DNA of 64,000 bases from Antechinus flavipes (taxonomy: Eukaryota). Position 1 is the first letter of the stretch. The number at the start of each line of letters is the position of its first letter. Shown piece by piece: positions 12,301 through 64,000 of this stretch. The stretch covers positions 717,650,001-717,714,000 of the forward strand of contig NC_067398.1 of assembly GCF_016432865.1 (NCBI RefSeq), in the 5' to 3' direction. Under the pieces are notes generated by a model. The model searched no databases and was not told where the DNA came from. It saw nothing but the letters and a program-made list of their open reading frames with translations. The position numbers and the translations under genes were made by a program.

Positions 12301-13757
12301 TTGAGCAGTTATTTAAGTTTTAGTCCCCAGGTTGCCTTCCTTCTCTCTCTTCAGATGACTTGCTGCCTTAGGCTGGCTTCATCCATTCCCTGTACCTTGG
12401 AAGAACTTAAAAAGGATTTTTAAAACTTAAAGGAGCTATACCCTATTATTATCCCCTATTCGCCATCTCCCCTCAGCGGCTGAGGAAAACGACTCGGGCC
12501 CCTGCACCTGAGAGTCCTCAAACCTGCTTCCCCCAGAACCCACAGCCTCCAGCCTCCATCTGGAGGTCATTCCCGTGGCCATCCCACCAACTGCTAATCA
12601 TGATAACCAACCTCAGGTGGGTAGGTAGCCAGCCGGGCAGAAGCAGCCGGGTGTCTGGGCCAGAAAGCGTTCCTCCTCATCTCCAGTCTACACACATCTG
12701 CACGGCTATTGCCCCATACCCGAAATGCCCTCCCTCCTCTCTCTTTCCTCAGAAAATCCATCAGGACGAAGCTTAAGCACTTCTTCTGCAGGAAACCTAC
12801 ACTGGTTCCCCTCCCCCACTCCTTCCCTCTCTTCCTCCCTCCCTCTCATTTAACGACTTTGTTTAGACTTGTATTTGACAATACCTTTCCAGTCCTATGA
12901 TCTCTCCCATTGCAGATAACCAAGGAAGGATTGGTTTCTGCAGCCCCTGGCACGGGGCCTGGCACACAGCAGGCACTTAATACATGCCTGTTGACATCCC
13001 TCATCCAGCACCACTTGCCTGGGCCCTGAGAAATTAAATCGCTCCCCCTCCCCACCATGAAATTAGATTACTTAGGATGGAAAGAAATCCAGTGTAGACT
13101 AAGGAATAATTACACACTGTTAGCATATTATAAAATATATTTTTTCTGTAAATGTTCGTGCATTTCTTTCTTGTTCAAGTCAGACTTGGGGGTGGGGAGG
13201 GGGACGGGGGGCTCCGCGGGCTCTGCCTCAGCTGGCGACGACGAACCTAGGGGTGCTTGGAGGCCAGCTCGCCCAGCCCCTCCCTTCCAAGGACGGACAG
13301 CACAGGCCCCTGCCGTGTTGGGGCCGGGGAGCCCCCGGGTCACCCCCATCTCTGGAGGAGGGAAGCGCATGACGTAAGGGAGGGAAAGCTGGTTTTCAGG
13401 TGGAGACACAACCTCACTAATACAGACAAAGTGTGTGATTGTGGGCAGATGGCTGCACCCTCCTGAGCCTCTACTTCCCCATCTGCAGAGTGGGAATGAT
13501 CAGAGCAGCACAGCTAGCTGACAGACCTCCGGAGTGGTTGTGAGGTAGTAGCACATAGTAGGTGCTTAATTAATGTTTACTGAGCATGGATGGGTCACCA
13601 CTAACGATGACGCTCAGTCGCTCACCGCGCGGTCTTTTGGAGTCTCTGCCCCTCTTAAAATGAGAGGTTGGATCAGCCGGCTCCCGGGGTCCCCCTCACA
13701 CTAACATCCTGTGACCTCCAGAACCCTGACCACCTGATGATCAGTGTGTCCTGGTGG

Positions 13758-19700: not shown

Positions 19701-22700
19701 CTCCCCCTCCCCGGGGCTGAGCGGCCCAGACCGGGCAGAAACGTGTTAGGCTGACAGGGGCAGAGAGGCCGGACAGGGGCTCACCAGCAGCAGGGCCCAG
19801 AGGACGCCGGCCACGGGCTCGGGGAGCTCGCCCTCCTCCAGCACCCAGGCCAGGGCGGCCCGATGCACCTCCGGGTCCGCGCCTCGCAGCAGGGAGCCCA
19901 GGGCCCGGGTCCGGGCGGGATCGGCCAGCCTCCCCGCCTCCCTGCAGAGGAAGCGGGCGCACTCCTGGCGCAGCGCGCTGGCGCCCACCTGAGAACCAAG
20001 CCGAGCTGTCAGAGGCACAGCCGCCGGGCCCCGCGGGCAGGGAGCGGTCCCTGGGGCGGGGGGCCCAAGGAGCTGCCTCTGGGGGCCCGTCCCTCCCAGC
20101 CTCAGTCTCCCTCTCTGTAAAGGGGGCATTAACAGCGCTCCCCTTGTTCTGAATCAGGGCCTTCCCTGGCTCCCCTGCCCTCCTCCGCTGCTGCCCCCTG
20201 GTGGGCACTTGGTGGTGGAGCCACCCTGGGCCCTGGATGCCGCCCCCCCTCCCCCCTTCATGGCACCAGGATGTGAATCTGAGTTGGGGCCGCGTACGGG
20301 GCCCCTACCTGTGTGTCCGGCCCAGGAGGGTCCAGCTCCTGGGTCACAGCGGCCTCGACCCGCTCCAGGAAGCCCTGGCTGCAGCCACTGGTCAGCAGGG
20401 AGAGAAGCCGCAGGTAGGCCGCGCGCATCAGCGGGCAGCGCTGGGCGGGCGTGAGCAGCCAGAACATGGCCTCCGCCTTCTGCGCAACAGCCTCCAGACC
20501 GGGGGGGGCCCGGCTGCCGACAGAGAACAGCACGGGCTCAGCCTGTGCCCCCCCCCCCCGGCCCACAGGCCTCTGGTCCCAGACCCCCCCCAGCCTGAAG
20601 TCCAGGCCCCGAAGGGCCTCCCCGGGGGGAGGGGGCGGCTCCCGGGATTGGCTCACCGGGCGCCGTCCTGGGCCACGAGGGCGTGGGCCTGCAGCAGCCG
20701 CCCGTGCAGCGCATTGTGGGGGCCGGGCTCCAGCAGTCCCTGCAGCAGGCGGAGCAGGACGTCCTCCAGTTCCGCCAGAGGCACAAAGGGCACCAGGGCC
20801 CGGGCAGCCATCGCCCGCGTGGCGTAGACCGGGCTCTCTGAGAGACGGAGCAAACACTCCTGGAACCGCGCCGCAGAGCTACGGAGAGACCCCCCGCACG
20901 GTGAGCCCCCGGAGTGGGCCTGGGCCAGAGGGTCGCGCCCCCAGAGAAGGCCAGGCTTGAGTGAGCTCAGGCCCTCCCTGGCTGCCCTTGGTCCGGCTGG
21001 CGCCTGCAGCCCCCTCCCCATCTCCGGTACGCTGGCACAGAAACCAAACATGCGGCAGGGGCCGGGGACCGGGGTCTCCAAGGGGACAAGCGGGAGCCAG
21101 AGAGGGGACCCCGGACGCCCCCTTTTCTCCATCCGGTGGCGGCCGCTGTTCTCTATCGCTTCTCCGGGAGATGTGGGACCTTGTGTTTCCACAGAAACTA
21201 ATGCAAGTAACATATATTGTATCTAGGATATACTGCAACATATCCAACATGTAAAGGACTGCTTGCCATCTGGGGGAGGGGGTGAAGGGAGGGAGGGAGG
21301 GGAAAAATCGGAACAGAAGCGAGTGCAAGAGATAATGTTGTAAAAAATTACCCTGGCCTGGGTTCTGGCAATAAAAAGTTATTATTAAATAAAAATTAAA
21401 AAAAAAAAAAAAGAGACTAATGCAAGTAAGAAACGTTCTGGGAAACCGAGTCTGGTTGGGGACAGATCTGGAGTCCGGACTAAAGCCGAGAGCCCCGAAG
21501 GGCAAGGAAGTGGCTCAGCTGGAGCGTGTGCCCAAGGGCTGGGGGGGCGTTAACCTGCCCCCCAGGAGGAGCTAGGACTCACAGTAGTGATCCCCCCAGC
21601 CCCCCTGCGGGGCCCGGCCTCCCTCCCCCCCACGGGGCCCGGCCTCCCTCCCCCTCCCCCCCCCACGGGGCCCGGCCTCCCTCCCCCCCCCCCCACGGGG
21701 CCCGGCCTCCCTCCCCCTCCCCCCCACGGGGCCCGGCCTCCCTCCCTCCCCCTCCCCCCCCCCGCAGGCCCGCCCCCCCCCCCCCTGCGGGGCCCGGCCT
21801 CCCTCCCTCCCCCTCCCCCCCACGGGGCCCGGCCTCCCTCCCCCTCCCCCCCCAAGCCCCGGCTCCCAGGAGCCCCCGGGCCCAGCACCTGCTCAGGCAC
21901 TCCGTGCCGGGCTGCAGCTTGGCCAGCAGGGTCAGGACGGCGTGGAGGTCGGGCCGGAGGCGGCTCTCCCCCCGGCGTCCCAGGGACGAGAGCAGCGGGG
22001 CCAGGAGAACGGCCTCCAGCGCGGGGAACAGGGTGAAAAAAGCTTGCGGGCTCAGGCCCTTGTGGGCGCCGCTGCCCTCGCGGCTCAGGCTCTGACCCAG
22101 CAGCCGGCCCTCGAGGGCGCCTGGGGAGGCAGAACCGGCCCATAAGCCCCGGCTCAGCCCGAGCCCCGGCCCCCGCGAGGGGGAGAAGTGGCCGCAGAGC
22201 CCCCCACTCACCGAAGAGCTGGCTGCCGGCGTTCCTCATGGCCCAGCACGGGGAGCCCAGAGCCCCCAGACACAGCGCGAGCAGCGGGCCGGCCCAGGCG
22301 AGCATCGGGGCCCCCAGGCCGGCCCCCCGCACCAGGGCTTGGAGCACGTGCAGAGCGGAGACCTGCCGGAGAGCGGGCGGCCCATCACCACTGGGGCTCC
22401 TGACCCACCGCCCGCGTCCCAGACCCCGGGGCCCCTCGCAGGGAGGGGAGCTAAGGGTCCGCGACCCACGGCCTCCAATGGGGACGGACCAGCCCCCGCC
22501 ACGCTCAGAGCAAGGGCTTCACACGCTGATGATGAAACGGGGTGGGGGGAGGGGCCTGAGAATGGGGGGTGGGAGGGGCCTGAGAATGGGGGGATGGGAG
22601 GCGCCTGAGAATGGGGGGTGGGAGGGGCCTGAGAATGGGGGGATGGGAGGGGCCTGAGAATGGGGGGTGGGAGGGGCCTGAGAATGGGGGGTGGGAGGGG

Positions 22701-25700
22701 CCTGAGAATGGGGGGTGGGAGGGGCCTGAGAATGGGGGGTGGGAGGGGCCTGAGAAGCGAGGTCCCGCTCACAGAAGGGCCTTGTGGGGGGCGGCGGCCG
22801 GGGCGTGCCCAGCTCTGCCTGTGGCTGAGGAGCCCCGACAGCCAACAGGAGCGACCCCCGGGGAGTCGAGGCCGGGCCCAGCCAGAGGAACAAACGCGGC
22901 CGCCCGGAGCTCCTACGTGGGGTCCTGTCAGGCTGAGGGAAGGGTCCTCCCCGGGGACCCTCATCCGACTCTAGCCCCCGGACCTCTGCAGGGCCCTCCC
23001 AGGCCGGGGAAGGAGGCTCCCGGGCTCCCTCCTCACCTGCGGCAGGTCCAGAGTCTGGTCCCAGACCTGAGGCAGGGGCCTCTGGGCCAGGTCCAGCAGC
23101 GTCCCCACACAGCGGGTCAGCAGGGGCCGGGCGCCCGTCGGCGGCTCGCCCGCCACGATGCACTGGATGAAGAGGGGGAATCCCGCCGCCCGGCGCGTCA
23201 CGGAGCTGTTCCGGGGACCCCTCAGCAACTCCAGGCCCTGGGAGCAGACCAGTGTGGGCGGGGCTGGGCCCGCCCCCTCCCTCTGCCCCAAGCCCCCCGA
23301 GAAGCTGAGCCCGAGCCGGGGTGTCCTCTGCCCTACCCCCCCCCGGGGGCAGCTACCTGGGCCAGCAGCTTCTGGGGCAGCTCCTGCAGCTCGGGGGCGG
23401 CCTGGCCCAGCAAGGCTCTGCAGGCCGACGTGAGGCCCGAGGCGCAGCCCTCCAGGGCTCCCTGGTGGAAGGAGGAAGGGGGGGGGGGGTGAGAAGGTGG
23501 GGGGAGGGGGAGAGAGAGGAGTGGGGAAGGGGGGAGGGGAGTGTGGATGGTGGGGGAGAGGGGATGGGGGGCGCTGAGCCTTGGGCCCGGCTGTACAAGC
23601 ACGGAGGGGACACGGGGAGGCCACGGGGTGCCTGAGCCCCCCCAGCCCTCCTTCCTGGAGGGCCCCGCCCCGGCCGGTCACTCACCCAGTGCCGGCACCT
23701 GAGCAGCAGCCCCTGCAGGGTGGCCACGATGGTCCGCAGGCCCTCCAGGGGCACGAGCGGCGGCCCCGAGCCGGCGACCGGCGGGGCCAGCAGGAGGGTC
23801 TTCTCCGCCAGGCCTCCCAGAAGCAGCCCGGTCTCCTAGGCGTGAGCGCGGGGCGTGAGCCAGGCTGCGGACCCCAGGGCCCAGAGCCCTGCTGGGGACC
23901 CGAGAACTTTGCCCCGAAGGGCCTCCCGCCCAGGTCAGGAGGAAAGGCCCAAGCCAGTTCCCCTCCGCAGCCCGGCCTGCCCAGGGGCAGCTCAGAGCAG
24001 GCAGGGCCCACAGGGGCGGAGGGGGTCAGGGGCCTGGTGGGGCAGGGGGCGAAGGGCACACGCAGCAGCCTCCAGCCCCCACCCGGCCCCACAAGGGGGC
24101 AGCCAAGGCCCACGGGCACACTGCCAAGCATGGCGCCCCCAGCCCACTCCCCTTCAGAGCGGCTCCCAACGTGCTCCAGGCCTGACCCCGCCCCTGCAGC
24201 TTCTCTGGGGGTCCTGGTTCCGGGTACTCGGGGATGACTAAGAAGCCCCCCGGCCTTCTCTTCCCCACACTCGACATCCCCAGTTCCTTCGCCCAATCCA
24301 CGCCGGCCCCGGACCCTCCCCCTCGGGCTGCCCTCCCCCCCAATGCTCCCCGTGGGCCCCCCCCCCCCGCCTCAGGGAGGGTCTCCCTCCTTCAGCAGGT
24401 GGGGGGAAGGGCAGCCCTGCCCCCAGCTCAGCGACTCACTCTTACCTTTGCAGAGATCCAGCAACAGGTCAGGATGCGTCCCTGCTCCTCGGACAGCAGG
24501 AGGGGCGGCTCTCCCTCCTCCCCCGCCTCGGGCCCCAGGCCCCCGGCCCGGCTTTGCCACACTGCGGCATTGATGGCCGAGCCCATGGCAGCCAGGGAGG
24601 GTGCAGCAGCTGCCAAGGCAAGGGCGGGGTGAGGGCAGCCGTGGGGGGGGCTGGGAGGGGGTCGTGGGCGGCAGGCCCGGGGGCATCCGGGGGGGCTTCC
24701 CCGAGGGAGGGGCCGATGGGGTCCCAGAGATGCCGTCTCTGCTGCGGGGGCCGGGGCGGGGGCCCACCTGGCTGCAGTTCTTCGGCAGAGCCTTGCAGGA
24801 CGGCCAGGAGGAAGGAGGCGACCTCGGCCAGCGTCGCCACGGCAGCCAGGAGCAGCTCCCGCCAGGAGCCCTGCAGAGGGGCCCGCCGCATGGACGGCTC
24901 TGTGCAGGGGGCCTCCAGCAGGCAGCGGCGCAGGGCACACAGAGGTCCTGGGGGAGGAACACGGCTCGTCAGCTCCTCCGTCCCTCCTGGGCCCGCCCGG
25001 CTCCAGGCCTAGCCTGGTGAGTGCCCCCAACCTCCCCCCCCAGCAGCGGCTGCCTTCGGAGGGGGCGGGGAGTGGGCAGGGCCAAGGCAGCAGGGAGGGG
25101 CAGAGAGGGGGAGGGGAGGGAGGAAGGAGGCTGGAGGGGGCGGCAAGCAGAGGCACAGTGGGGATGATGGGAAGGAAGAGAGAGCATGGGGGGGGGGGGA
25201 GGGAGGATGCCCTGGGGAAGGAAATCAAGGAGACAAGGAGGGAAAGGATCAAGCTGGGGCACAGTCCTGAGAGAGAGAAGCGGGGGGACACCGGGAGGGA
25301 GCACTCAGCCAAACAAGAGGGGGGACGCTGTGAAAAAGAGAACCGGGGCACGTAGTGAGGGACAAAGGGGGACCTAGAGCAAGCCTGGGAAAAGGGAAGG
25401 AGGGCTCGGCCCTTTGTGTGAAGGCACACAAAGGGAAGGGATGGGAGAAGCAGGTGCCCAAGGCCAGGAGGGAGAACAGAGGGCACACACTGGTGAGAAG
25501 TGAGGGCGCCCAAAGTGGGGAGAGAGAAGCGAGAGCGCACCGAGGAGAGAAATGGGGGCGCCCAAAGTGAGGCGAGCCCCAGGGGCTGCAGGGGGATGCA
25601 CGGGGGGACGGGCAGGTTAGAGCTCCCACCGTGGAGCGGCTGGGCACAGGCAGCCTGAAGCAGGTCGTGCCGGGCGGCAGCGAGACGCTCTTGCAGCAGC

Positions 25701-34400: not shown

Positions 34401-35939
34401 ACCAGCCTGACCACTAGTGAAGACACGGGGATGGGGAGGGACAGGGCTCGGAGACCGGAAAACGGTCCGAGACAGAGTCACCGAGCTTTGAAGAAGCCTG
34501 CGCCTAGCGGGTGCCAGTGCTGGGGAAGGAGGGACAGGGACCCCGGAGGGAGGCCGAGGCTCCGGGAGGGCTCCTCCTGCGGTTGACCGGCTACACCTTG
34601 TTTGCACGTAATTGTTTGCCGTTAGATCGGCGCTCCGTGTCCGAAGAGATCGTTTTCCTCTTTCCTGGTTTTTAATGCACTTAATCACACTGCCTGGCAT
34701 ACAGCAGACACAATAAATGCTGACGGCAGCTGAAAGAGTCCGGGAGAACGGAAGGCAAACTGAGAAGGGACAGCGTCTCGGCCGTGTCATGTCCTGCTCC
34801 AGTCATGGCCGGTTTTATTCTTTGCTAGCACATAGGATTTGGTCCACCCACCATGTGGAAGAAACGCTGCAAGGTGCTGGGGATTCAGAATGAAAAGAAA
34901 CTGTCCCTGGCCTCCAGAAGCTTCCCTTCTACCGGGAGGAGGGCACAATGTATACATAGATAAGGAAATAGAAAGTAATTCTGGTCCCTTTCGCTGCTTT
35001 GCCCCTCACTACAGGACCCCGTTTCTCCCTTCCACCTGATCTCCCTGTCAGGTAGGATCTCCAAACTGAATATTCCCGGGTTGATTTATTCAGGCCTGAA
35101 TTCTGCTGAAGTCGGGATTCACGTCCCTAATTGCCTACCTTGACTTGGGGTCCTCCACCATCTTAAACCCAGCAAGGCCAAAACGGAAGGCGTCTAGTTT
35201 TCTCCGAAAGTTCTCTCTTCCTCCTAACTTTTCCTCCAGCTCACAGCCTAGGGGGCAGCCTATTACCAAGTCCCGTTAATTCAAAACATTTTCCATACGT
35301 AGGGCTATGGATTTGTCCATACGTACATATTTGCATGTATCTGTAGCTATTTACATAAAGTTATATTCACTCCTGACTCTTGGCAATAGCTTTGTGCTTG
35401 GTCCTCCCCTCAGCTCTGTCCCCGGTCCGATCCAACTCACCCCCCGAAACCCCCCCTCCCCCCACACACATGTCAAAGTGACCTTCCTTAAGCACAGACT
35501 TGACCCTGTCACCCTCTACTCAGTCAACGCCAGGGACGGCCTGTCACCTCCGGGGTCAGACACGAACTGCTCTGGTTGGTGCTGACAGCCCCCTCCTCAC
35601 GCCTCACTCCCCACCCCATCCTCTTCCGCCCAGTGCCCTCGCCACCCGGCTGCTCCACCAGCAAGACCCTCCATCTCTGGGCTCCGGCCATTGGGCGACC
35701 ACCGCCGCAGCTGGACCTCTCTGCTCTGCCCTCCCAGCTAACCTACGGAAGCTTCCCTATTTCCCACAATTCCAGCGCCTCCTTCTGGGGCTTATGTCCA
35801 AAGCTGCTCTGAACGGGTCTGATTTGCAGGTGCTCTCTCCCATTAGACTGGGGACTCCCCAAGGGCAGGGTCCGTCTTTGCCTCCCGGGGCTTCACATAG
35901 TTTGTGTCAGTGTTTAATAAATGCGGGTCTGATCCGACA

Positions 35940-36340
35940 GACTAGGAGGGCGTCGCGGGGAGGAGGAGGCGTGGCCTACAGGCCCGGTGCGCCCGGCCGC
36001 GGGCCCACGGGAATGAGAGATTGGCTCCGGGGAGCCGCCGTCGCCGCTCGGGAGCACGTGACCTCCGGCCACGCCTCCCCGTTCCCCGGGCAACCGCGCC
36101 CGCCCCGCCCTGTACCCGGAGGTCGTTGGCGCAGAGCGATGGCGTCGCCGTGACGTCACCGTCGCGCGCAGCCCGGACACCGGCTGGGAGCGCGCCGGCC
36201 GCCGCCGCGGCCACTGGTGGGGGCGGGTATCCTGGCCTCGGGTGGGTTGGGAGGGCGCGCGCCGTCTGCGCGGCGGGGCCCTGCCCGGCCACCGACGGAG
36301 GCCCGGCGCCGCACCCCCGAGGGAGGGCTTAGCCGGCCTC
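35940..36340 (+). promoter_or_regulatory. CpG-island promoter, probable non-coding first exon of the Myb/SANT gene
   Basis: Dense CpG; perfect CRE palindrome GTGACGTCAC 36150-36159, E-box CACGTGAC 36055-36062, reverse CCAAT (ATTGG) 36020-36024; the downstream coding exon starts at an acceptor and needs an upstream exon. Confidence 0.6.
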
Positions 36341-36786: not shown

Positions 36787-37200
36787 GGAGTGTGACCTCC
36801 AGGGAACCCCCCCAGTCTGGGGATCCCAGGGGACCCCAACCCCTGCAAGGGGGCAGGGAGTGTGACCTCCAGGGAACCGCCTCCCCCCCAGTCTGAGGAT
36901 CCCAGGGGACCCCAACTCCTGCAAGGGGGCAGGAGTGTGACCTCCAGGGAACCTCCCCAGTCTGGGGATCCCAGGGGACCCCAACCCCTGCAAGGGGGCA
37001 GGAGTGTGACCTCCAGGGAACCTCCCCAGTCTGGGGATCCCAGGGGACCCCAACCCCTGCAAGGGGGCAGGAGTGTGACCTCCAGGGAACCTCCCCAGTC
37101 TGGGGATCCCAGGGGACCCCAACTCCTGCAAGGGGGCAGGAGTGTGACCTCCAGGGAACCCCCCCAGTCTGGGGATCCCAGGGGACCCCAACCCCTCCAG
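36787..37200. repeat. Minisatellite, about 69 bp x6 (ggagtgtgacctccagggaacctccccagtctggggatcccaggggaccccaacccctgcaagggggca)
   Basis: Six near-identical copies; 23-aa periodicity in the ORF track (VTSREPPQSGDPRGPQPLQGGRS). Confidence 0.95.
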
Positions 37201-40400: not shown

Positions 40401-43400
40401 CCGTTGAGAGGGAGGAAGCCCCACTGTTACACGTAGCATTAATCGGTGGCGCCCACCGCCTCCCTGGCACGTCCGGCTCCCATGTGGCACAGCTGTGATT
40501 GTGAGGGGACATTTCTCTCCAGCCAGCTGACTTGAGCTTTACAAAGCACAGCCCTTCGGGTACCGGAGCTCCACGCATATGCCCTATCCCGAGTCTTTGT
40601 TGGGGAAAACCTGCCCAGTTCCTTCAGCTGATCCTTCCGTGACACGGAGCCCAGGCCCTCCACCATCCCGGCCGTCCCCTCTGGACTCTGAGCTTCTCGG
40701 TGCCTTTCTTAAACCGAGGGGCACTTGATGAAGGCTGAGGATCCCAGCCGGACGATCACCTCCTCTTCCTGGAAGCGGCTCCTCTCTTGGGCTGAATGAA
40801 CACCCTCCATTCCGAGATGGAACGATCAGTCCATCAGCCAGCATTTATTAAGCACCACTAAGGGTCAGGCGCTGTCCCGGCTCCCAGGGATACGAAAAGA
40901 GCCCAGTTCCTTCCTTGGGGAGCTTGTGATGTGATGGAGGAGGCAAACAAATGTATACCGGGCATGCTGCAGACTGGATAAAGAGGAGATAATTAGCTGA
41001 GGGAGGGTGCCAGAATTAAGGGGGACTTAAGCATGTGGAACTAAAGGAAGCCAGAGAGATCAGTGTTTTAGCCTGGGGGATGGCCTGAGAAAATGCTCAG
41101 AGCCCACAGATGGAGGGTCCTGTGTGTGGACCAGCTGGGAGGGGAACAAGGCAGGAGAAGACAGGAGATAGCTTAGGAGGCCTTCGAGTGCCAACCAGAG
41201 CATCTCGTTTTTGCTCCTGGAGCCAATGGGGTGATGAGATCAGACTTGGGCCCGAAGGATGGTCTGGATGGGGGGAGACCTAAGGCAACAGAGCCCCCAG
41301 CAGCCACTGCAGGAGGCCTGGTAGAGGGAATGAGCTCTGGCAGAGAAGAAAAGGGGGAAAAAAGGAGATAGAATGGAGGTGACATGGACAGGCAGAAGTG
41401 GGGAGGAGATCAGGGTGACCTCTCAGGTGTGAACCTGGGGGAGCCAAGAGGGGTGGTGCCCTCAGCTATGAAAGGGAAGGGAATGATGATGAGTCGTGTT
41501 CAGACATCTTATCACTCCATCCTGTCTGACCTTCCTGGACCATAACCCATCAGGCCTTTCTGTCCTCCCCCATCTTCCAGAATCTGTCCACGCTCCTGCG
41601 TGTTCTTCTCTGATCCTGTCTCCACCTCATTCTCTGGCGCCCCTTCTCCTTTTGTTCAGTCTTTCCCGACGTCGGGGTCCTTTCCAATGAGTCCCATCTT
41701 CTCACTATGTGGCCTAAGGGTTTCAGCTTTTGACCTTCCAGTGAACAGTCTGAATCGATTTCTTTGAGGACGCACCGATTTGCTCTCCTTGCCGTCTGGG
41801 GGACTCGGACATTTCCTCCGGCACCACAGTTTGAAAGCCTCGGTTCTGCGGCGCTCAGCGTTGCCGTCTCGTCGCCCAATGCTCACAGCCATACGTCGCT
41901 GCTGGGAAAATCCTAGTTTTGACTTCACAGATTCTGCAGGCAAGCGATGTGTCTGCTTTTTAGCACGCCGTCCAGAGCTTTCTTCCTGAGGAGAAGCGGC
42001 TTTTGATTTCCTGGCTACAGTCACTGTCTCCAGTGATCCTCGAGCCCGAGAGCATAAAACCTGACCCTGCTTCCATTTCTTCTGCCCCTGTTTGCCAGGA
42101 AGTGATGGGACCAGTTGCCAAGATCTTGGGTTTTTTGATATTAAGCTTCAAGCCAGCTTCTGTACCCTCATCTTTCACCCACACCTTCACTTTCTGCCAT
42201 CAGAGTGTATCCCCTGCGCATCTGAGATTGGCGATATTTCCTCCAGTAATCTTCGTTGCCGCTTTTGATTCACACAACCCGGCCTGTCACCTGATGTTCG
42301 CCGCATAGAAGTTAAATAAGGTAACGACGTACGGCCACGTTATTGGCCTTTCCGGTATTAAACCAGTCGGTTGTTCCACATTCAGTTCTCACTGCTGCTT
42401 TTTGGCCCGGGTACAGGCTCCTCGGGAGACAAATGTAATGGTCTAGTACTCCCTGTTGGAGGGCTTGCCCCATTTTATGTGATCCACACAGTCAAAGGCT
42501 TTCGTATAGTCTTTCGGGAACTCCCTCGCTTTCTCCGTTATCCAGCAAGCGTCGGCAGTTTGGTCTCTAGTTCCTTTGCCTCTTTAAAACCCTAAATGCG
42601 CTTGTGATTCTTGTGTCACAGACTGCTGACCCTAACCCAACCCTAACTTCGCGCCAAACCTAGCTTGCAGAACCTTGAGTACGATTTTGGCAGTGTGGGA
42701 AATGAGCACGATTGATGGATAATTGGAAAGTTTCTGGGCGTTGACCTTCTTTAGGGACGTGACCTAAACTGATCGTTTCCCATCCAGCGGCCGCTGTGGA
42801 GTTTTCCAAATTTGCTGGGTATTAAGTGCGGCATTTTAAGAGCCTTAAAAGGCTCAGCTGGAATTCCATCCCCACCACTCGCTTGATTGTCTGCCGGCTT
42901 CCTGAGGCGCACTTGACTTCTCTCTCCAGGATGTCTGGCTCTCTCTAGATCAGGAACCACACCATGGTGGTTATCGGGTTATCAGGTTATCACGGTTCTC
43001 TCTTTTCTTGCCACTTAATCTCTTCTGCTTTTGTTAAATTCCTCTTGTTATCTCACCCATTTTTGCACAAGATATTTTTGTATCTTAAAAGGATCTCTTG
43101 GCTTTTCTATTGTTTTTTTTTTTCCTGTTTCTTTGCATTGTTCATTTAAGAAAACCCTCCTCTCTCCTTAGTATTCTCTGGAATTCTACATCCTGTTGTA
43201 GTTATCTTTCCCTTTCCCTTTCCCTCTTTCCTCGGCTGTTTGCCAAGCCTCACGGAAGTCAGTTTGCTTTCTGGCTCTTTTCCTTGGAATATTTTTTGTT
43301 GCTGTGGCCTGCACGATATTGCAACCCCCTGTCCGTAGTTCTTCGGGCCCTCTAGCTACCGGATCTATTCCCTTAAATGTATTCATAATGCAGTCGTCGT

Positions 43401-51231: not shown

Positions 51232-52873
51232 CAAGTCTGTTTTTAAAAAATTGGCTGTTTTCCCTCCCCTGCAAACCCTCCAGGATGGGGGGCTTTGGCC
51301 TCTGCCCCCTGCCTGCCCCCAGACTCTCCTACTTCTGCCGTAGGAGGCCCGCTCCCTGTCAGGAGGGAAGAAGGAAAATGGCTTGCGGGGGATGTTCCCC
51401 AGCCTCCCCCTCCCCGCCCAGGTCGGCCTCCTGCAGTAAATTGTTCCTCCAGTCATGCGGCCAGGAGTGCTTTCGCCTGGTGAACGAGAAAAGGGCCCTC
51501 AAACCAAGCCCAGGAGTCTCCTCTAAGAGATGAGCTGCAAATGTTTAATACGCACCTACTGTGTGCGGCCCTGGGGGGGAGGGGGCGCCCGCAGCCTGTG
51601 ATTGAGCTCCGGGTGGGGAAAGTCCCTCTATCCAAAGGAGCGTCTCCGAGCACAGCCTCGTGTCCACGTGTCCGTGGCCAGGTCATTCCCCTGTGGGAGG
51701 GGGAGGGGCTCGCACCCGGCAGCGGCTGTTAATGCCGTGGGGGCAGCAGGAGGCTACGGAGGCCAAGTGGAGGCAGCTGGGCAGGGGCGGCCCCTCTGTG
51801 TTCAGCGCAAACTCCGGGCTTCGGTCCCGGGACGTGGAGCTCGAGTGTGGCCTCCGTGGAGCCAGCGAGAAGCGCCCCTGGTCCCCATGCCGCCCCCGGA
51901 AGCTCTGTCCGCAATCCCCCTTGGCTTGGAGCCCCGGGCTCTCATGGGCCTCTGTGGAGGCCCTGACTCAGCAGGAGGCTCCCAGTCCTTCCGTCTCCTC
52001 TAGGGAGGCTTGGGCTCATTTCTCCTCCTGAGCTTCAGACTAAGTGCAGTCACGTGCACACAGTAGGTGTGTGAGACTTGGGACACCCTCATGCCCCCTG
52101 AGGCCGTTAAGGAGGATGCTCCGGGGCATGGAGCACTCCCTGTGGTGCTCAGTCTCTCCAGCGCTGCTGCTTCCCAAAGCTCCCCCCCCAGGCTCCCTCC
52201 CATGCTTGCTCTCTGCTGCTTCTGGAGCCAAAACCAGCCACTGAGGCAGAGCTTTCTCAGGTCCCTCTTCCCGAGTCGGCCTCCCCCGGGGTGTGACATT
52301 CAAGGCCCCATTTACTGCCCAATTTCTAAAGCGCTTCGATCCTAAGCCACGGCTCCTCAGAAAAACCATCAAATCAATGACCAACGAGCATTTATTATGC
52401 ACCCACTGTATGCCAGACACCCGGCTAAGTGCTGGGCACACCCCCCCCCCCAAGGTGTCCCTGCTCCCAGGGAGCTTACACTCTACGGGGCGGAGGGCGC
52501 CCCCTCCGCTGCGGCCGAGGAACCGCATTCTCCTGCACATATACCAGAGGCGGCAGAGCCGGCTCCCCGGGCTCCCCTCGGCCTCCCGGCCCCCACAGTC
52601 AGGGAGCTGCTGGGAAGCTTCCGGGCCCACCCGGCTCTAGGCCCCGGTTTCTTGCTCTGTGAAGCCGGCCCGGCCTAACAGCCTCCGGGTCCAAGTCCTG
52701 TGGCCCCGCGCTGCCTGAAGCCTCCTGGGCCCATCTGGGCCCTGCCCCCCCTTTCCTGAGGGATTCTGGGGGGGGGGTCACTGTCCACCAACGGTCACCC
52801 CGGCAGTGACCCCGGCCTGCCCGGCCCCTCCACATCTCACACAGACAAAACGGCCGTTGATACCAGCTTGTGG

Positions 52874-56600: not shown

Positions 56601-59055
56601 GGGCTCCCCATCACCCCACAATCAAAGGCTCCTCTGCTGATGGGCTGGTCTCTCCACCCCCTTCAGCCTGGGGGCGCCGCAGGACAAGGGCTGCCATCCC
56701 AGAAGCCTCCACTCTGGCCTCTGCTCCCACTGCTGCCCTGGGCCCTTGCCCCTCCCTCCCCGGCTCCTGGCTCCTAATCTGGCTCCCTTCCATCCCATCT
56801 CAAAGGTCTTTCCCCTCCCCAGGATCCCGGTTCCCTCCTGCCCCCTCCCCCACTGTCCCCCTCCAGCACCTTGCCCCCCCTTGTCCCCCTCCCGCGCCCT
56901 GCCCCCCCTCACCGATGCCCCGGTAGCGAGGGGGGTTGGCTTTCTCGTCCAGCTGCAGCTGCGTCTTCACGTACTCGGTGGGGAAGGTGATGCAGATCTC
57001 GATGCCCCCGGCCAGGCCGCCTGGGATGGGGGACAGCGGGGTTTGGGGGGGCTGGCTCCTGGGGGGAGGGGCGGCCCCCCCACGGGCTCCCGCACCCCTC
57101 CCCCGGCCGCCACTAGGGGGCGGGGTAGAGGCCGGTCTCGGGGCTGGGATGCGGACTGTCGATCCCCACTAGGTGACCCTACAACAGCCCCCCTCCCCCA
57201 GGCTCCCCCTCCACCAGGGGCGGGGCTGGGGCGCCAGAGCCCCCCTCTACCTGCCCTTCCCCCTTCCCCAAAGGGGCATCCCGTCCAGGCAGGTCTCGAG
57301 GTATTGAACCCAAAGTCCCTTCTTCTTCCCCTCCCCCCATTGGACAGCGCCAGGAGCCCCAGATGCCCGGGACACGCCCCCTCTACTGGGGATATTCCAA
57401 GACCCTCCCCCACCCCAGCCTGGGGAAACATGACTCAGCAAGGTGGAGGGGGGGGAGAGAGAGAGCTGGTCCGGAGCCATTTGAGGGATTTCAAAGACCC
57501 AACTCGCCCATTCTGCAGAGTGGGAAACTGAGGCCCATGGAGGGCAAGGGGCTGGTCTAAGGCCTCCCAGGAAGAAAGAAGCAGAGCGATTAAAGCCCAC
57601 ACCTCTTTAATTCCTCCACAGTTGCCCAGTGTGTGCCCCTCAAGGAGAGTCCCTCCCCTCCCTGAATCCGTGGACACCCCTCCCCGGAGGCTGCCTAGCC
57701 CGGGGATTGACACATTGGGAAGGAGGGGGCGCTCCCTGGAACTCGGGCTCCGCTGCTGGGCTGGACTGCCTCAGTTTCCCCTTTACCCAAGTCCTGGCCC
57801 AGACCCGTTCTCTGGGAGGGAGGGGAGAGAAGAGGCCTGTTGGCCAGGACTCCGCCCCCGTGAGTGTCTGCTCTCGGTCCGAGTGGGGACCCAGCCCAAG
57901 CCCCCCTCACCGGAGGCCCCCTTCCCCCTCCCCCCCCCCCACGAGCCCAGGGGCCTGGTTCCAAGCCAGCCCCTCCCCCAGGCCCGGAGCTCCGTAGGGA
58001 TGAATAAAAGGCGCCTAATCCGGGCACAAGCTCCGGCCCCCGGCACCAGCCACTCTTCCTTTTGCAGACAAGGAAACTGAGGCTCGGGGAGAAGAAAGCG
58101 GACCACGGCTTAGGAGCACCGCTCCAAGATCCTCGCGAGGGGGGTCCGGCAGGCTCTCCCTGCGGCCAAAACTCTTGCCCCAGGACCTGGCGGCCCCCTC
58201 ACCGACAGGGAAAGAAACTGAGGCCGCAAGAGGGCCCGGCTCCGGCTCTGGGACGAGGGGGCGGCTTCGGAGCCGCAGAGGGCCGGGGCGCCCGGGACCG
58301 AGGCAGACAAAGCCGCGGCCCCCGCAGTCTCGTGGGCCCGCCCCCACCCGGGGGAGGCCGGGGTCCCCCAAGACCACGGAAGGCGGGACAAGGGTCGGTG
58401 GGAATCCAGGGGAAAGGGTGCGTGGGGGAGGCGTCTGGCCCCGCCCCCACCCCGGGAGGGGGGTCCCCCAGAACGAGAGTTGGTGGGAGTTCGGGGGTGC
58501 ACGGAGGAGGCATCCGGCCCCGCCCCCACCCCGGGAGGGAGGTCCCCCAGAAAGGGTCGGTGGGAGTCCGGGGGTGCCCGGAGGAGGCATCCGGCCCCGC
58601 CCCCAGGCGATCCTGCGGACCCTCCCCCACCCCGGGGAGGCAGGCCCCCCCAACAAGGTACAACTGGCCGAGGGTCAATGGGAGTCCGAGAAGAGGGGGG
58701 AGCGCAGGGTGCGTGCGGGAGCCCCCAGCCTCTTCCCCAAACAATCCCGTCGGCCCCACCCCCATCCCGGGGAGGCCGGGGTCCCTCGGGTCCAGAGCAG
58801 GAGCCGTGGGGAGCCCGAAGGAGGGAGGCCCCCCGATCTCCCGGGGAACTTCCGGGGGGCGCCCCTTCCTCTGGGCCCCCGCTCCGCCCCCGGGTAGCGG
58901 GGCCCGGAAGCGGCCGGCGGCAGGGGGCTGGCGGGGATGGCGGCGGCGTGCTCACCTGCCAGGATGGCCTTCCCGGGGTGCGTGAGCTTGGCTTTGCCGG
59001 CCGGGGCGGCGGCGGCCAGCGAGCGGCCGGGGAGCGGGGCGGGGGCCAGAGCCAT
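53629..59055 (-). CDS. SLC25A1: Mitochondrial tricarboxylate (citrate) carrier, 9 exons, 313 aa
   Basis: Exons 59055-58956, 57020-56913, 56219-56120, 55682-55544, 55183-55099, 54911-54807, 54726-54611, 53900-53827, 53743-53629; total 942 nt, all GT-AG and in phase. Peptides [101 protein letters not shown]. Confidence 0.99.
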
Positions 59056-59500
59056 GATCGCGGGGGGCTCCGGGCTGACTCTCGCCTCGGCGTTCTGTGC
59101 TCCCGGGGCCAGCGGCTGGCGGACTGGCCGACTGAACCGACCAGGGGCGGCGGCGGCGGCGGGTTCTGGGGGGTAGGGGGCGGGGTCTCGGCGTCAGGGC
59201 CTCGCTCCGCCCCCTCCCGCCCCCCGCCTGAGGTCGGACGGCTCCGGCTCCGCCCCGCCGCCTGACCCAGGCTCCTCCCCGGCCTTCCCTCGGGGGCCCG
59301 GGTCCGAGGCCCGCCCCGCGCCCGGGCCCTGGGCCCGGCGGCCTCTGGGCGGGCTGCTGGCGGGGGCGGGGCTGGCCGGCGCCGCTCTGCTTCTCCCTTT
59401 CTGCTGGTAGCTGAGCCCCCATTTCTCCTCATTCCCCGCCCCCCTCCCCCCCGGCTGAGGGCGGTCCCCGGGGCCCCCACGCCTGTTTATGTCCCTTCCC
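58100..59500 (-). promoter_or_regulatory. CpG island and GC-box promoter of SLC25A1
   Basis: Very high GC/CpG spanning exon 1; multiple GGGGCGGGG/CCGCCC boxes at 59170-59320. Confidence 0.75.
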
Positions 59501-61050
59501 AGGCCTTCACGTCCCCAGGAAGAGACAAAAGATCCGGGTTTCGGGGCTGAGGCTGCCGCGTCCTGGAATCTGTAACCTCCAATTGCTCCGCCTCCGCGGG
59601 CCTCAGTTTCCCCGCCCGTCCAATCTGGCCTGACCCCCGTAAGACCGCTTCCAGGTTCTGCCGGGGTCTGCTCTGAGGCCCCCAGCCCCGCATTCCTTGC
59701 TCCTCGGGCTCAGTCTCGTCCTGTTCTAAGGCCCTGGGGCCGCCCTGCCCGGCTCCGAGCTCTCCCCTCCAGCCCTCAGGGATCTTTCCTTTGGGCCGGG
59801 GTCCTGAGGGGGGAGGGGATGCTGCTGGGGAGCAGGGCCTCAGTGGGCCTTGGAGGACCCGGGGACCAGTAGGCAGGTGGGCCACCGCGGAGTGTGCCGG
59901 GATCTAGGCACCGAGGGGGGACCCCTTTCCTGCAGGCCCTCAGCCGGGCTTTTTCCATCCTCAGCTCAGCCTGTGACCCCCGGCCCCAGCCTGTGACTCA
60001 TCCAGCCCAGCCTTGGCTAGGAGCCATTGCCAGACTTTACCTCTTCTGCTCGGGCTGCCGGAGCCCTCCCTCCTCCCGGGCTCCTCCTTTCTGCCCGGCC
60101 CCTCCTCTCACTTATTTATCTTCCTGACTCCGAGCTCTGCTGTGCTCTCCCCAAGGCCTCCCTTCTGTGTCCCAATCCCAGAGGTCCCCGAGACGTGGGC
60201 GGAATAGCCTACGGCCCTCAGCATTTCCTCCATCCCTGCCAGAGGGGGCGCTGGTCCCCTCCCCATTCCCCTTGGGGACAGCGCGTCCCTCCGGGCCCCC
60301 TGGGAAGACCCCACCCTCCAGGGCCAAGCTGTCCTCCGGGTCACCGGCCTGAATTGCTGGAAGACCCTAATGTTCCCCCCTTTCCCCCTCCTTTGTGGAA
60401 GCCTGGGTCTCCCCATCTTGCCCAGGCTGCCGTGCAGGGTTCCTTGCAGCCAGCATGAGAGATGCATCCTGGGAATTTTCCCCCAGGGGTTCACCATGTG
60501 ACATCTGCTCCCCGGAGCTCACCCTGTGCCCGAGCCAGCCCTCATCTCCCACAGAGCTGGGGTCACACGTGTCCAACCACTGCACCTTCCGGCTACACTC
60601 TGTTCCCTCACTGGGCCTCCTGCTCTCCAGCCTGGTTATCTTCCCTTGGCCTCCTACATCTCCCATCATCCCCGGCCTCCCTCTTCTCCCTCCCACTGCT
60701 CACACAGCTGCCAAAGGGGTCTCTCCAAAGTCCAGCTCTTGCTTGTTGCCATCAGGAAGCTCTCGGGCTTCCCATTATCCCGAGCAGCAGATCCACACTC
60801 TCGTGTTTAGCATTGCAAATGCTTCCCAGCAGCACCTGCGAGCCTGCCTGCGGACCCCTCCTTTCTAGCCGTGCAGGCCTAATAGTGGCTGTTCGTACAC
60901 CTCCCCCCTGCTCCCTGCACAGGCTGCCCCTCTGCTTGCGGCGACCCCTGCCTCGTCTCTGAGGCCCCTCGGTCTGTTGAAATTCAGCCCGATGCCAGCT
61001 CCTGCAGGAAGCTCCCTTGTGGGGCCGGAGCCTCTGGGCCCTCTCTGGCA

Positions 61051-61340
61051 GTGACATTGCATCTACCTGGGTAAAAGGTTACACTGTATCTGCCTGGACA
61101 GAAGGGAAGGAAAGTTACATTGTATCTGCCTGAGCACAGGCAGGGTAGTTACATTGTATTGGGGGGGAGAAAGGAGATAACAGTTACATTGTATCTGCAT
61201 GTGTATACATGGAGTGGTTACATTGTATCTATCCAGTTGTGGCTGGGTATGCATGGGGAAAGTTACATTGTATCTACATAGGTATGTGGGGAGAGAATGG
61301 TTACATTGTATCCATCCAGGATAAAAACCAGTTGTATCTC
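61051..61340. promoter_or_regulatory. Homotypic cluster of 8 DMRT/Doublesex-type motifs GTTACATTGTATCT with variable spacers
   Basis: Copies start at 61051, 61078, 61114, 61148, 61183, 61217, 61262 and 61300; six have the exact core GTTACATTGTAT (reverse complement ATACAATGTAAC). Confidence 0.55.
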
Positions 61341-61534
61341 CCCAGGATGTACAATCCTACTTTCACTTCTGGGTAACTTTCCCTCCAAGATAATGTAAAT
61401 TGGGGAATGGGACTATTTTCTGTCCCCTGCAGAGAGCAATGTGTTGGGTTCACAGTCAAAGTCCCCCTTTTTTCTTTCTCCTGACCATGTGACTCCTCAG
61501 CCCAGGCGCGGAGGCACCAATGGGGATGAATGGG

Positions 61535-61705
61535 GGAAAGTACACAGAACTTGGAGTCAGGGAAAAGGAGCTTGAATTGTGCCCCAGACACTTGAATGTC
61601 TGTGACCTCTCAGTTTCTCTATCTGTAAAATGGGAGTAACAATAGCACCTACTTCCCAAGGTTGTGAGGATCAAATGAGAATATGCAGGGTTTGGTAAAG
61701 TCTTG
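61535..61705 (+). mobile_element. MIR fragment
   Basis: ggagtcagg...tgtgacctctcagtttctctatctgtaaaatgggagtaacaatagcacctacttcccaaggttgtgaggatcaaatgag. Confidence 0.8.
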
Positions 61706-64000
61706 GAATTCGTCACACCCAAGGAGGAGATTTTCCTCACGGGCCAGGCCCCGGACCTTCCTTTACCTCAGTTGTGTGATGTCCAACCTCCCTTCTATCT
61801 AGTCTTAACTCTTCTCTCCGGCTCTGCTATGTGTGTGTGTCCTCAGGGATCACCCAGACGAGGCACAGAGACGCAGAAATGCTGAACCCCCAAATATATC
61901 GGGGTCCCGGACACTCCTCATTGACCGTCCACCCAATGTTGGGAGGAGGGGACGAACCCCCAAATATATTAGTGTTTCAGGCCCTTGTCACAAGGAGGCC
62001 ATTGCCAAATGGAGGCAAAGATGTCATCATGCTGCTGGCAATGGGCTAATTATGCTAATTAGCAAGGGGAGGGACTGGGGTGGTCAGTTCCCTTGGGAAT
62101 TCACAACTAACAGGGCGGCCAACCACAAGGCAGCCTAAGTGAGTTAAGGGAGGGCCGGCCATCGCCTGCCAGGCTGACCCCAGGAGGAGTTACTGCATCC
62201 ACAGGCAGACGCCATAAGAGGGCCAAAGTTCCTAAAGAACTCGCTGGGGTGTTCCCATAGGGTGGGCGGTTTCTAACGAGCCCACCGCGGTGACGCTCAG
62301 GGAGCGGAGCCGACCCTAAGGGAGGGGGACTGGGGTACAGTAGGTGGAGAAAACGGGGAAATGGCGGGTGACAGATCGGCCTGATGGGAAATAGCAAGGG
62401 GTGGAGAGAACTTTGTCAAAGCCCGGCATCTGACCTGGGATCCCGAGGCAATCCGGCCAAAGCTGCTCCCTGCTCCCTCGGGAATGGCCTGGGAATCCCA
62501 GGGGGCCCTGGGAACTTCACCAGAACTGCCCTCCCTAAGGCCCGCCTGGAACGGGCGCCCAGGGGCTCGGCCCTTTGTCACCCCAACACACAGGCCGCTC
62601 CTCCCAGTGTGCTCAATTCCACCCGCCCTTCAGGGTCCCCCAATCTGGGGTCCGAGTGTCCCAGGGGTATTGCTATCCAAAAGCTGGTAGGGAGCCCAGA
62701 CCGGAATCTGGTGACTGGGAGGGGCTGAAAAGTCTGGGCCCCGGTGGGGCTGCCGGCCAGAAAAGCTGTGTGACCTGGGGGGAAAAATGCCTTCTCTGGA
62801 GCTATTCTCTAAAAGGAGTCCTGGGCCATGGGAAGCCCCTTTCCCCCCCTCATGGGTCTGAGGCAGGAAGGAATCCTTTGAGCCCCGTGCCAGCCGGAGC
62901 AGGCCTCGAGGGCCAGGGAACCCTCGGTCCAAGCTCTTCCTTTGGAATGGGGTGAGGGGCGGCCCAGGCCCACCCCCCCAGGTTGGTGGCTACCCCTCCC
63001 CGCCAAGGCAGAGACTTCCTGGTTTGTCTCCCAGACAAAGTTCAGAAGGCGGTCCCTTCCTCTTCTGCAAGTCCTGGAACAATCTTTTCCTAAGGGCGCG
63101 TGGGGCCCCAACTTGGCTTGTGGCCGGGGCAGCTCCCGAGGAACTGGATGTTCTGTTTCCGGAGGCCCCGGGCTTGGAGGGAGCCCGGGCAGGATTTGCA
63201 CATGGGGCCTCCCCCTCGGGCTCTGGGGGCGGACTCCCAGCAGGCCCTGCACCAGCCCTCCCCACCCGGGAAGTAGGCCGGAGGGCGCTGGGCCTTTGTC
63301 TCCCCAGGCCCGCTTGGAGTGCCTGGCTATTAGGACACCGCAGCCCCCGGGGAGACCGGGAGCGTGGGCTAGCTCAGTCTCTCTGGCCCTGGCAACGCCC
63401 AAGAGACTTATCCCTGGGGCCGCCCCCATGTCCCCCAAGCCGCGGCCCTTCCAGCAAGGGGAGCCTGCCCAGTCGGGTGCTCGGCTCCTGCAGAACTTTC
63501 TCCCCCTTCTCACTCGTTGTGACTGAGGGAGGCAGGGAGGCCGGAGGATGTCTGAGAGGCCGGAGGATGTCTGAGAGGCCTAAGGTCCTTCTGAAAGCCC
63601 GAGCCTGTGTGTGCTCGGGGCCACTCCCGGGCTGCAGCTGCTCCCTCTGGTCCCTCGGCTCACTGGCGGCTTCGCGGGCCGAGCTCCCGTGCCCGGCGGG
63701 CAGCCTGGGCGTCTCTGCCACGGGGACACGCCGGGAGGAGTCCAGAGTCCAGCTCTGGCCCCCTCCCCCCATGGGAGCTCCCCGGGACCAGCTCCGGCCC
63801 TAAGCCAGTCTGCCCTTCTAGAACACCGGAGAACAATCCGAGCCCTGCTCCCTCCCTGGGTGTGAGATCAGGCGGGGACAAGAAAGCGCTGATCCCCCCC
63901 CCCCCAATCTTGGCCAAAAGAGCTTTTAAATGCAAAACCCCTGCAATGCCATGGAAACTGATTAAAGAGAGTCATTTTCTGGCACCAAAAGGAGCATTAA

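What the first reader, a model, noticed from the sequence alone, without database searches (positions are those of the whole stretch)
61051..61340. Repeat-spacer array of 8 DMRT-type sites about 2 kb upstream of SLC25A1: candidate testis/sex-regulated enhancer
Seen: a 14-bp motif recurs 8 times with start-to-start spacings 27, 36, 34, 35, 34, 45 and 38. The cores are nearly invariant while the spacers differ greatly, unlike the homogeneous VNTRs elsewhere in the window. Established: DM-domain factors bind the pseudo-palindrome ACA(A/T)TGT; the reverse complement TAGATACAATGTAAC fits the DMRT1 consensus as I recall it (TWGHWACAWTGTWDC). Inference: an old minisatellite in which selection kept only the binding sites, giving a homotypic DMRT enhancer for SLC25A1 or a neighbour.
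Basis: partly seen in the sequence, partly recalled or inferred. Interest (0 to 1): 0.72.

Follow-up and report, generated by a model that had tools for sequence, protein, structure and literature searches.

The report
Array of DMRT-type sites upstream of SLC25A1
About 2 kb upstream of the citrate-carrier gene SLC25A1 in a marsupial genome, a worn-out 35-bp tandem repeat keeps eight nearly identical copies of a 14-bp word that matches the binding site of the DMRT sex-development factors. This suggests, but does not prove, a conserved docking array for such a factor.

Summary
The word GTTACATTGTATCT occurs eight times (two or fewer mismatches) at exactly the stated positions and spacings, against 0.04 expected, and nowhere else in the 64 kb.

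The cores differ from their consensus at 6 of 112 positions. The spacer positions next to them differ at 42 of 104 (Fisher p = 2e-10), and the spacers vary in length from 13 to 31 nt. Other VNTRs in the window, and an unrelated minisatellite that carries the same 13-mer, show no such protected block.

The DM-domain reading of the word also holds in silico. One published DMRT1 SELEX winner is letter-for-letter the 15-mer at two cores. Six cores score 17.4-20.9 of 25.5 bits on a matrix built from the 22 SELEX sites. The 11 best matrix hits in the window all lie in the array.

Three things are not shown:
- Conservation in other marsupials.
- Any binding.
- Any link to testis or to SLC25A1 expression.

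SLC25A1 lies on the minus strand, and the array sits in the CLTCL1-SLC25A1 spacer.

Best reading (about 0.4): a homotypic cluster of DM-type sites kept by selection. The scan noted a similar core-and-spacer array (ZNF143-type, JOSD2) elsewhere in this genome.

The parts
61051..61344 (+). The whole array: 8 full units plus a ninth unit that lacks the first five core letters. The period is 27-45 nt (mostly 34-38). GC is 43% with no CpG, inside 62-75% GC flanks.
61051..61064 (+). Core 1, degenerate (2 changes, including TGT to TGC). DMRT1 matrix score 9.6 bits.
61078..61091 (+). Core 2, with 1 change at the central position (T to C, a base never selected in SELEX). 12.1 bits.
61114..61127 (+). 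Core 3, exact. 17.4 bits.
61148..61161 (+). Core 4, changed only at positions 13-14. 19.0 bits.
61183..61196 (+). Core 5, exact. 18.3 bits.
61217..61230 (+). Core 6, exact. With its two preceding bases (61215-61229) it is identical to a published DMRT1 SELEX winner. 20.9 bits.
61262..61275 (+). Core 7, exact. 17.9 bits on the minus-strand reading.
61300..61313 (+). Core 8, with 1 change at position 14. The 15-mer 61298-61312 is again identical to the SELEX winner. 20.9 bits.
61331..61344 (+). Ninth unit: the core lacks its first five letters (GTTGTATCT, followed by CCCCA).
   Evidence: (family D3)
61345..61386 (-). Inverted, disrupted unit. 61373-61383 is a perfect reverse complement of the spacer-tail and core-head junction at 61256-61266.
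   Evidence: I1, I2
58954..59055 (-). Coding part of SLC25A1 exon 1: 34 codons from the ATG at about 59055 down to about 58954 (the 3' end is approximate). It lies about 2.0 kb from the array. The rest of the gene runs down to about 53.7 kb on the minus strand.

Best explanation
This is the remnant of an old tandem repeat of about 35 bp, in the spacer between the clathrin heavy-chain gene (CLTCL1 type) and SLC25A1 of a marsupial close to the Tasmanian devil. The spacers have drifted almost to randomness and changed length. A 13-14 bp AT-rich pseudo-palindrome, G-TTACA-T-TGTAT-C, has stayed nearly invariant in six to eight units. That word is a high-scoring site for DM-domain factors (the DMRT family). 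The most likely mechanism is that each core is bound by a DMRT dimer or higher oligomer. Six strong sites about 35 bp apart would then form a homotypic cluster that holds the factor at high occupancy and acts as a DMRT-responsive regulatory element for a nearby promoter; SLC25A1 is the nearest, at 2 kb. Shown here: the array, the uneven decay, and the motif match. Inferred: purifying selection, binding, and regulatory output. Open: which DMRT paralogue, which tissue and which target gene.
For: The array and its spacing are far beyond chance. Cores differ at 6 of 112 positions against 42 of 104 for adjacent spacer positions, p = 2e-10, and the spacers are barely more alike than shuffles. Low variation covers all 14 positions: 4 of 48 at the outer positions 1-3 and 12-14, and 2 of 64 at the inner positions. 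The footprint is therefore longer than a 7-bp monomer site. The cores are 32% GC in a 62-75% GC neighbourhood, and five of the six core changes are T to C or G, which fits a drift toward GC that most cores have resisted. The 13-mer is not an intrinsic mutational cold spot: in an unrelated 30-bp minisatellite carrying the same word it varies as much as the rest of the unit, 9.3% against 7.5%. Other VNTRs in this window show no protected block. For the motif, the Murphy 2007 SELEX data (PMC1931443) describe a 13-bp inverted repeat around a central A/T with G at -6. One of the 22 DMRT1 winners equals two cores with their flanks. The matrix gives 17.4-20.9 of 25.5 bits for six cores, and the 11 best hits in 64 kb are all in the array. 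The base after the core is a purine in 8 of 8 units; read on the other strand this gives the pyrimidine that 20 of the 22 SELEX winners carry at -8. DMRT1 is described as a pioneer-type factor that opens chromatin (PMC8216462).
Against: I obtained no sequence from another species, so selection rests on one sequence and on the assumption that the units started out identical. There is no binding, chromatin or expression evidence. The array has no CpG and is not part of the promoter CpG island. Position -7 on the minus-strand reading is A, which is rare in SELEX (2 of 22). The two edge cores are impaired. The matrix rests on only 22 sites, one of which is identical to the word being scored. The literature search found no link between DMRT1 and SLC25A1.
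Confidence: 0.4

Rival explanations
1. A neutral relic. The array is a decaying minisatellite with no function. The cores look conserved because of uneven mutation or slippage in the purine-rich spacers, because the units were built by duplications of unequal extent, or by luck. The DM-type match is a coincidence of an AT-rich palindrome.
For: There is no cross-species evidence. Spacer length changes (13-31 nt) show that indels and slippage act there. There are traces of higher-order duplication: a 69-nt offset at 74% identity and an offset of about 132-152 nt at 65%. The same 13-mer occurs by chance in two unrelated eukaryotic minisatellites. The array has no CpG and lies outside the CpG island.
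Against: A roughly eightfold lower change rate over a contiguous 14-bp block, p = 2e-10. The block is AT-rich in a GC-rich region. The same word is not protected in the control array L002. No comparable pattern appears in the window's other VNTRs. Even between the most similar unit pairs the spacers are only about 53% identical (my arithmetic on family D2, with the cores taken out), while the cores are about 90-100% identical.
Confidence: 0.25
2. The array is under selection, but the binder is not a DMRT. It could be a SOX factor, since every core contains ACAATG (CATTGT on the other strand), or another factor that recognises a palindrome. The array would then be a SOX-type or mixed SOX/DMRT cluster.
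For: The cores contain the SOX core word (own knowledge of the WWCAAWG consensus). [quoted passage not shown]
Against: Conservation extends over 13-14 bp, including the outer G..C pair, which is longer than a SOX monomer site. The word is a pseudo-palindrome with a one-base centre, which is the DM-domain signature. I had no SOX matrix to score.
Confidence: 0.2
3. The array is part of a mobile element. Either it is an internally expanded 3' region of an old LINE-2-type element, or it is the subterminal repeats of a DNA transposon. In that case the repeated word would reflect the element's own biology and the same structure would occur at many loci.
For: By eye, and from my own recollection of the LINE-2 3' end, the flanks at about 60480-61050 and 61345-61480 resemble that element. 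Six family copies exist in the window, and some carry a similar word (ATACATTGT, ATACATTTGT) just before the conserved CCTCC...TAGA..GTAAGCT block. An inverted partial unit closes the array.
Against: A profile built from the six window copies gives no hit at all on 60400-61520, even with filters off. The best pairwise flank alignment has z = 2.2 and the others are 1.3 or below. I found no terminal inverted repeats or target-site duplication. An old element would have decayed evenly after insertion. There is no second array in the 64 kb.
Confidence: 0.1

Closest known systems
DM-domain binding sites (DMRT1-7, DSX, MAB-3) as defined by SELEX in Murphy et al. 2007 (PMC1931443)
   Same: A 13-bp inverted repeat around a central A/T, with ACA(A/T)TGT at the centre, G at -6 and C at +6. 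One DMRT1 winner is identical to two cores, and near-identical winners exist for DSX, DMRT2, 3, 5 and 7.
   Different: Known functional sites are single or few. A tandem array of 6-8 sites has not been described: searches for DMRT1 with 'minisatellite' and with 'SLC25A1' found nothing relevant. Binding was not tested here.
Transposable-element-borne Dmrt1 site in medaka dmrt1bY (Herpin et al. 2010, PMC2820524)
   Same: A repeat-derived sequence supplies a DM-type site to a regulatory region (title and abstract).
   Different: That case is one site inside a transposon copy, and it was tested functionally. Here there is a tandem array, the mobile-element origin is unproven and function is untested.
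Homotypic clusters of transcription-factor sites derived from tandem repeats, including the ZNF143-type array at JOSD2 that this scan noted in the same genome (s1-196623)
   Same: Short invariant words at a regular period with drifted spacers near a gene's 5' end. Selection is inferred on the words only.
   Different: A different word and factor family. This array is 2 kb from the start codon, outside the CpG island. The JOSD2 note reports conservation across marsupial orders, which I could not test here.
Ordinary minisatellites (VNTRs)
   Same: Head-to-tail units of about 35 bp, degenerate edge units, and traces of higher-order duplication.
   Different: The units are not homogeneous. Tandem Repeats Finder detects only 2.3 copies, and variation is concentrated entirely outside a 14-bp block.

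Membership tests
DM-domain (DMRT/DSX) binding site | A pseudo-palindrome of six-base half-sites around a central A/T, with ACA(A/T)TGT at the centre | tested here: met
   Seven of the eight cores carry ACA-T-TGT or a one-base variant. Six are intact. The definition comes from PMC1931443.
DM-domain (DMRT/DSX) binding site | G at -6 (invariant for DMRT1) and C preferred at +6 | tested here: met
   G at position 1 in 8 of 8 cores and C at position 13 in 7 of 8. SELEX counts are 22 of 22 and 14 of 22.
DM-domain (DMRT/DSX) binding site | A score within the range of experimentally selected sites | tested here: met
   Six cores score 17.4-20.9 of 25.5 bits, and two 15-mers are identical to a SELEX winner. 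Caveat: the matrix has 22 sites, I counted it by hand, and it includes that winner.
DM-domain (DMRT/DSX) binding site | The preferred pyrimidine (mostly T) at -8 | tested here: inconclusive
   On the minus-strand reading, -8 is C or T in 8 of 8 units, but -7 is A, which is rare in SELEX. On the plus-strand reading, -8 varies.
DM-domain (DMRT/DSX) binding site | Actual binding by a DM-domain protein | not testable with these tools
   Needs EMSA, DAP-seq or CUT&Tag.
Conserved homotypic enhancer cluster | Several sites for one factor within a few hundred bp | tested here: met
   Six strong and two weak sites within 263 bp.
Conserved homotypic enhancer cluster | Sites conserved between species while the spacers drift | not testable with these tools
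Orthologous loci in Trichosurus and Petaurus were found but came without DNA. No ORF-based relatives turned up.
Conserved homotypic enhancer cluster | Open chromatin, enhancer marks or reporter activity | not testable with these tools
   No such data could be reached.
Minisatellite / VNTR | Head-to-tail units that are alike over their whole length | tested here: not met
   Only 2.3 copies pass Tandem Repeats Finder. Spacer identity is 0.437 against 0.425 for shuffles.
LINE-2-type 3' end (origin of the unit) | Flanks align significantly with other family copies | tested here: inconclusive
   The profile of six window copies gives no hit. The best pairwise z is 2.2. The resemblance is by eye and from memory only.
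DNA transposon with subterminal repeats | Terminal inverted repeats, a target-site duplication, and motif copies inverted at the two ends | tested here: not met
   There is only one inverted partial unit at the 3' side, and no TIR or TSD.

The most novel reading that the evidence does not exclude
A marsupial-lineage landing pad for DM-domain factors. The tandem repeat would have been kept for tens of millions of years only for its six to eight high-affinity DMRT sites. It would recruit a pioneer-type DMRT (DMRT1 in the gonad, or a neural or somitic paralogue) to switch the CLTCL1-SLC25A1 interval in a sex-specific or tissue-specific way. No DM-site tandem array of this kind has been described.
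Probability: 0.15. Interest if true: 0.7.

Novelty: new member of a known kind. Interest (0 to 1): 0.45.

Why it matters
DMRT factors are the most widely conserved regulators of sexual development, yet few of their direct cis-elements are understood, and none is known in marsupials. If the cores are conserved across species, this array would be a clean natural experiment: one word, six to eight copies, neutral spacers as an internal control. It could be used to measure selection on DM-type sites, and it would make an easy reporter or EMSA substrate. It would also add to the evidence, already noted once in this genome at JOSD2, that decayed tandem repeats can survive as arrays of transcription-factor sites. 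If the array turns out to be species-specific or unbound, it is an ordinary decaying minisatellite.

Tried and rejected
**Sequencing reads**
I therefore went on with other tools. From that stretch I sent out only the two-core pattern (one collection scan), one ORF translation (one protein word search) and one Rfam scan of 59500-64000.

**Orthologous DNA**
- One exon-bearing ORF, given by reference, went into the large protein search.
- An emu protein from that search seeded the word search. This found marsupial SLC25A1 proteins from Trichosurus, Petaurus, koala, opossum and Tasmanian devil.
- Their genomic loci came back without DNA because the files are too large. Only gene order was returned.
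- Exact look-up of ten ORFs beside the array found nothing. The word search with the 166-aa ORF next to the array also found nothing.

**LINE-2 origin**
- Iterative nhmmer searches from these found six family copies in all.
- Neither the profile nor the pairwise alignments link the array flanks to the family significantly.

**Other checks**
- Rfam scan of 59500-64000 gave only a sub-threshold SNORA73-like hit.
- The array is not coding: the ORFs across it are 41-63 aa and the period is not a multiple of three.
- By eye I compared the core with glucocorticoid/androgen response elements (ACA and TGT are one base apart here, not three), HNF1, forkhead, TEAD, PAR-bZIP and POU consensus sites. None fits; this rests on my own knowledge.
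- One script holding typed protein letters came back unrun. I rewrote it by reference.
- One literature search timed out.

Full report
**What is there**

GTTACATTGTATCT, with at most two mismatches, occurs at 61051, 61078, 61114, 61148, 61183, 61217, 61262 and 61300. All hits are on the + strand, with spacings of 27, 36, 34, 35, 34, 45 and 38.
- Dinucleotide-preserving shuffles give 0.04 hits on average, and the remaining 63.7 kb has none.
- Four cores are exact. The two edge cores at the 5' side are the most damaged.
- A ninth unit that lacks the first five core letters starts at 61331.
- An inverted, disrupted unit follows at 61345-61386. Its arm 61373-61383 is a perfect reverse complement of the junction at 61256-61266.

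**Cores against spacers**

Cut at the cores, the spacers are 13-31 nt long and purine-rich, and MAFFT can barely align them.
- Cores differ from their consensus at 6 of 112 positions. The first 13 spacer positions differ from their own column majority at 42 of 104, which understates their divergence. Fisher p = 2.4e-10.
- Pairwise aligned spacer identity is 0.437 against 0.425 (sd 0.013) for shuffled spacers. A little residual similarity remains, concentrated just after the core (GCCTG, ATCCAG).
- Tandem Repeats Finder recognises only 61078-61159 (2.3 copies, 81% matches).
- Traces of higher-order duplication remain: an offset of 69 nt at 74% identity and an offset of about 132-152 nt at 65%.
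- This is what an old minisatellite looks like when one 14-bp block has been spared.
- The sparing covers the whole block. The outer positions 1-3 and 12-14 show 4 changes in 48 and the inner positions show 2 in 64.
- Five of the six changes are T to C or G. The cores are 32% GC, the spacers 50% and the flanks 62-75%. The array has no CpG.

**Controls**
- The window's other VNTRs (15225-16238, 21621-21852, 22540-22756, 36787-37196) vary at 2-13% per column, with variable columns scattered along the unit. None shows a saturated part next to an invariant block.
- A scan of metagenome contigs for two exact 13-mers 15-35 nt apart found three unrelated loci:
  - L003 is a young, homogeneous 35-bp minisatellite in an unknown eukaryote. 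Its core shows 0 of 169 changes and the rest 10 of 286.
  - L002 is an older 30-bp minisatellite. There the same 13-mer varies as much as the rest of the unit (35 of 377 against 37 of 493).
  - L004 is a bacterial two-copy site.
- L002 shows that the word is not intrinsically slow to mutate, at least in that organism.

**What the word is**

Murphy et al. 2007 (PMC1931443) describe the DMRT1 site as two six-base inverted repeats around a central A/T. G is invariant at -6 and -8 is strongly preferred. All DMRT paralogues bind similar sites.
- Their supplementary list of selected oligonucleotides contains, among the 22 DMRT1 winners, TGGTTACATTGTATC. This is exactly window 61215-61229 and 61298-61312.
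- Near-identical winners occur for DSX, DMRT2, DMRT3, DMRT5 and DMRT7.
- I hand-counted the 22 sites into a matrix. Six cores score 17.4-20.9 bits of a possible 25.5. The 11 best-scoring positions on either strand of the window are all in the array. The best hit elsewhere scores 15.3.
- The base after the core is a purine in all eight units. Read on the other strand, this gives the pyrimidine that 20 of the 22 SELEX winners carry at -8.
- The match cannot name a paralogue. Each core also contains the SOX core ACAATG. Lindeman et al. 2021 (PMC8216462) note that the in vivo SOX9 and DMRT1 motifs overlap and may share elements.

**Genomic setting**
- SLC25A1 is on the minus strand. Exon 1 starts at the ATG near 59055, exon 2 lies at about 56850-56960, and further exons run down to about 53.7 kb. 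They match marsupial SLC25A1 proteins.
- The array is therefore about 2.0 kb upstream of the start codon. It lies beyond the promoter CpG island (75% GC at 58.0-59.5 kb).
- In Trichosurus and Petaurus the clathrin heavy-chain gene ends 7.5 and 6.4 kb upstream of SLC25A1 on the same strand, and a Myb_DNA-bind_5 gene lies downstream.
- No clathrin coding sequence is seen up to 64000, so the array lies in the intergenic spacer.
- The 5' region translates to 63 of 66 identities with a mis-predicted Tasmanian devil protein. This points to a close relative of Sarcophilus.
- An old MIR-like element follows at about 61540-61760 (identified from my own knowledge).

**Origin of the unit**

From memory, the flanks resemble the 3' end of a LINE-2-type element, and the core resembles a word that lies just before that element's CCTCC...TAGAATGTAAGCTCC block.
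- Copies at about 34950 and 40950 do read ATACATTGT and ATACATTTGT at that place.
- The test itself fails, however. The six-copy profile gives no hit on 60400-61520. The best pairwise flank alignment reaches only z = 2.2 (10 of 400 shuffles).
- I keep this as an unproven lead.

**What could not be done**

The decisive test is core against spacer conservation between species, and I could not reach it.
Instead, an exon-bearing ORF given by reference seeded the large search, and a word search followed.
- The marsupial loci found this way came back without DNA.
- ORF-based look-ups beside and next to the array found nothing.
- No paper links DMRT1 with SLC25A1 or with minisatellite arrays.

**Verdict**

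Selection on the cores is strongly suggested by internal statistics and controls, but it is not demonstrated. Binding, tissue and target are open.

| Reading | Probability |
|---|---|
| DM-type site array kept by selection, acting as a DMRT-responsive element | about 0.4 |
| Neutral relic | 0.25 |
| Selected array bound by another factor | 0.2 |
| Mobile-element feature | 0.1 |

Noticed in passing
window 2187-2620 (-), 12600-13010 (+), 34838-34985 (-), 35600-35940 (+), 40820-41260 (-), 52370-52700 (-): Six diverged copies of one old interspersed repeat. By my recollection it is a LINE-2-type 3' end, closing with the TAGA..GTAAGCTCC..GGCAGGGA and ..CCTGGCACA.AGT.GG..AATAAATG blocks. I found them by iterative nhmmer within the window.
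   Followed up: partly
L003 868-1336 (metagenome contig Ga0256844_10057095): A homogeneous 35-bp minisatellite of at least 13 units, each containing the same 13-mer GTTACATTGTATC. It begins about 40 bp after the apparent end of a dienelactone-hydrolase-like coding stretch, in an AT-rich eukaryotic contig of unknown origin.
   Followed up: partly
L002 about 750-1710 (metagenome contig Ga0099364_10242169, minus strand): A 30-bp minisatellite of about 29-32 units that also contains GTTACATTGTATC. Here the word varies as much as the rest of the unit, so I used it as a neutral control.
   Followed up: yes
L004 5993-6038 (QWCV01000251.1): A bacterial contig with two exact copies of the 13-mer, each preceded by GAATCAG, lying between two coding regions. 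It looks like an operator-type direct repeat and is unrelated to the marsupial array.
   Followed up: no
proteins P0024 and P0189 (Equus asinus): Predicted eutherian proteins that fuse the clathrin heavy-chain C-terminus to full-length SLC25A1. These are read-through models across the short CLTCL1-SLC25A1 spacer.
   Followed up: no
window 63010-63219 (-): A weak SNORA73-like Rfam match: 18.6 bits against a gathering score of 74, E = 0.16. Most likely chance.
   Followed up: no
window 63538-63575: An exact tandem duplication of a 19-nt stretch (GGCCGGAGGATGTCTGAGA, two copies) in the GC-rich region beyond the array.
   Followed up: no
window 16239-16413: A run of 175 N directly after the 28-bp VNTR at 15225-16238.
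   Followed up: no
window 61540-61760: An old MIR-like SINE fragment (..CTGTAAAATGGGAGTAACAATAGCACCTAC..GGATCAAATGAG..) about 200 bp downstream of the array. Identified from my own knowledge only.
   Followed up: no
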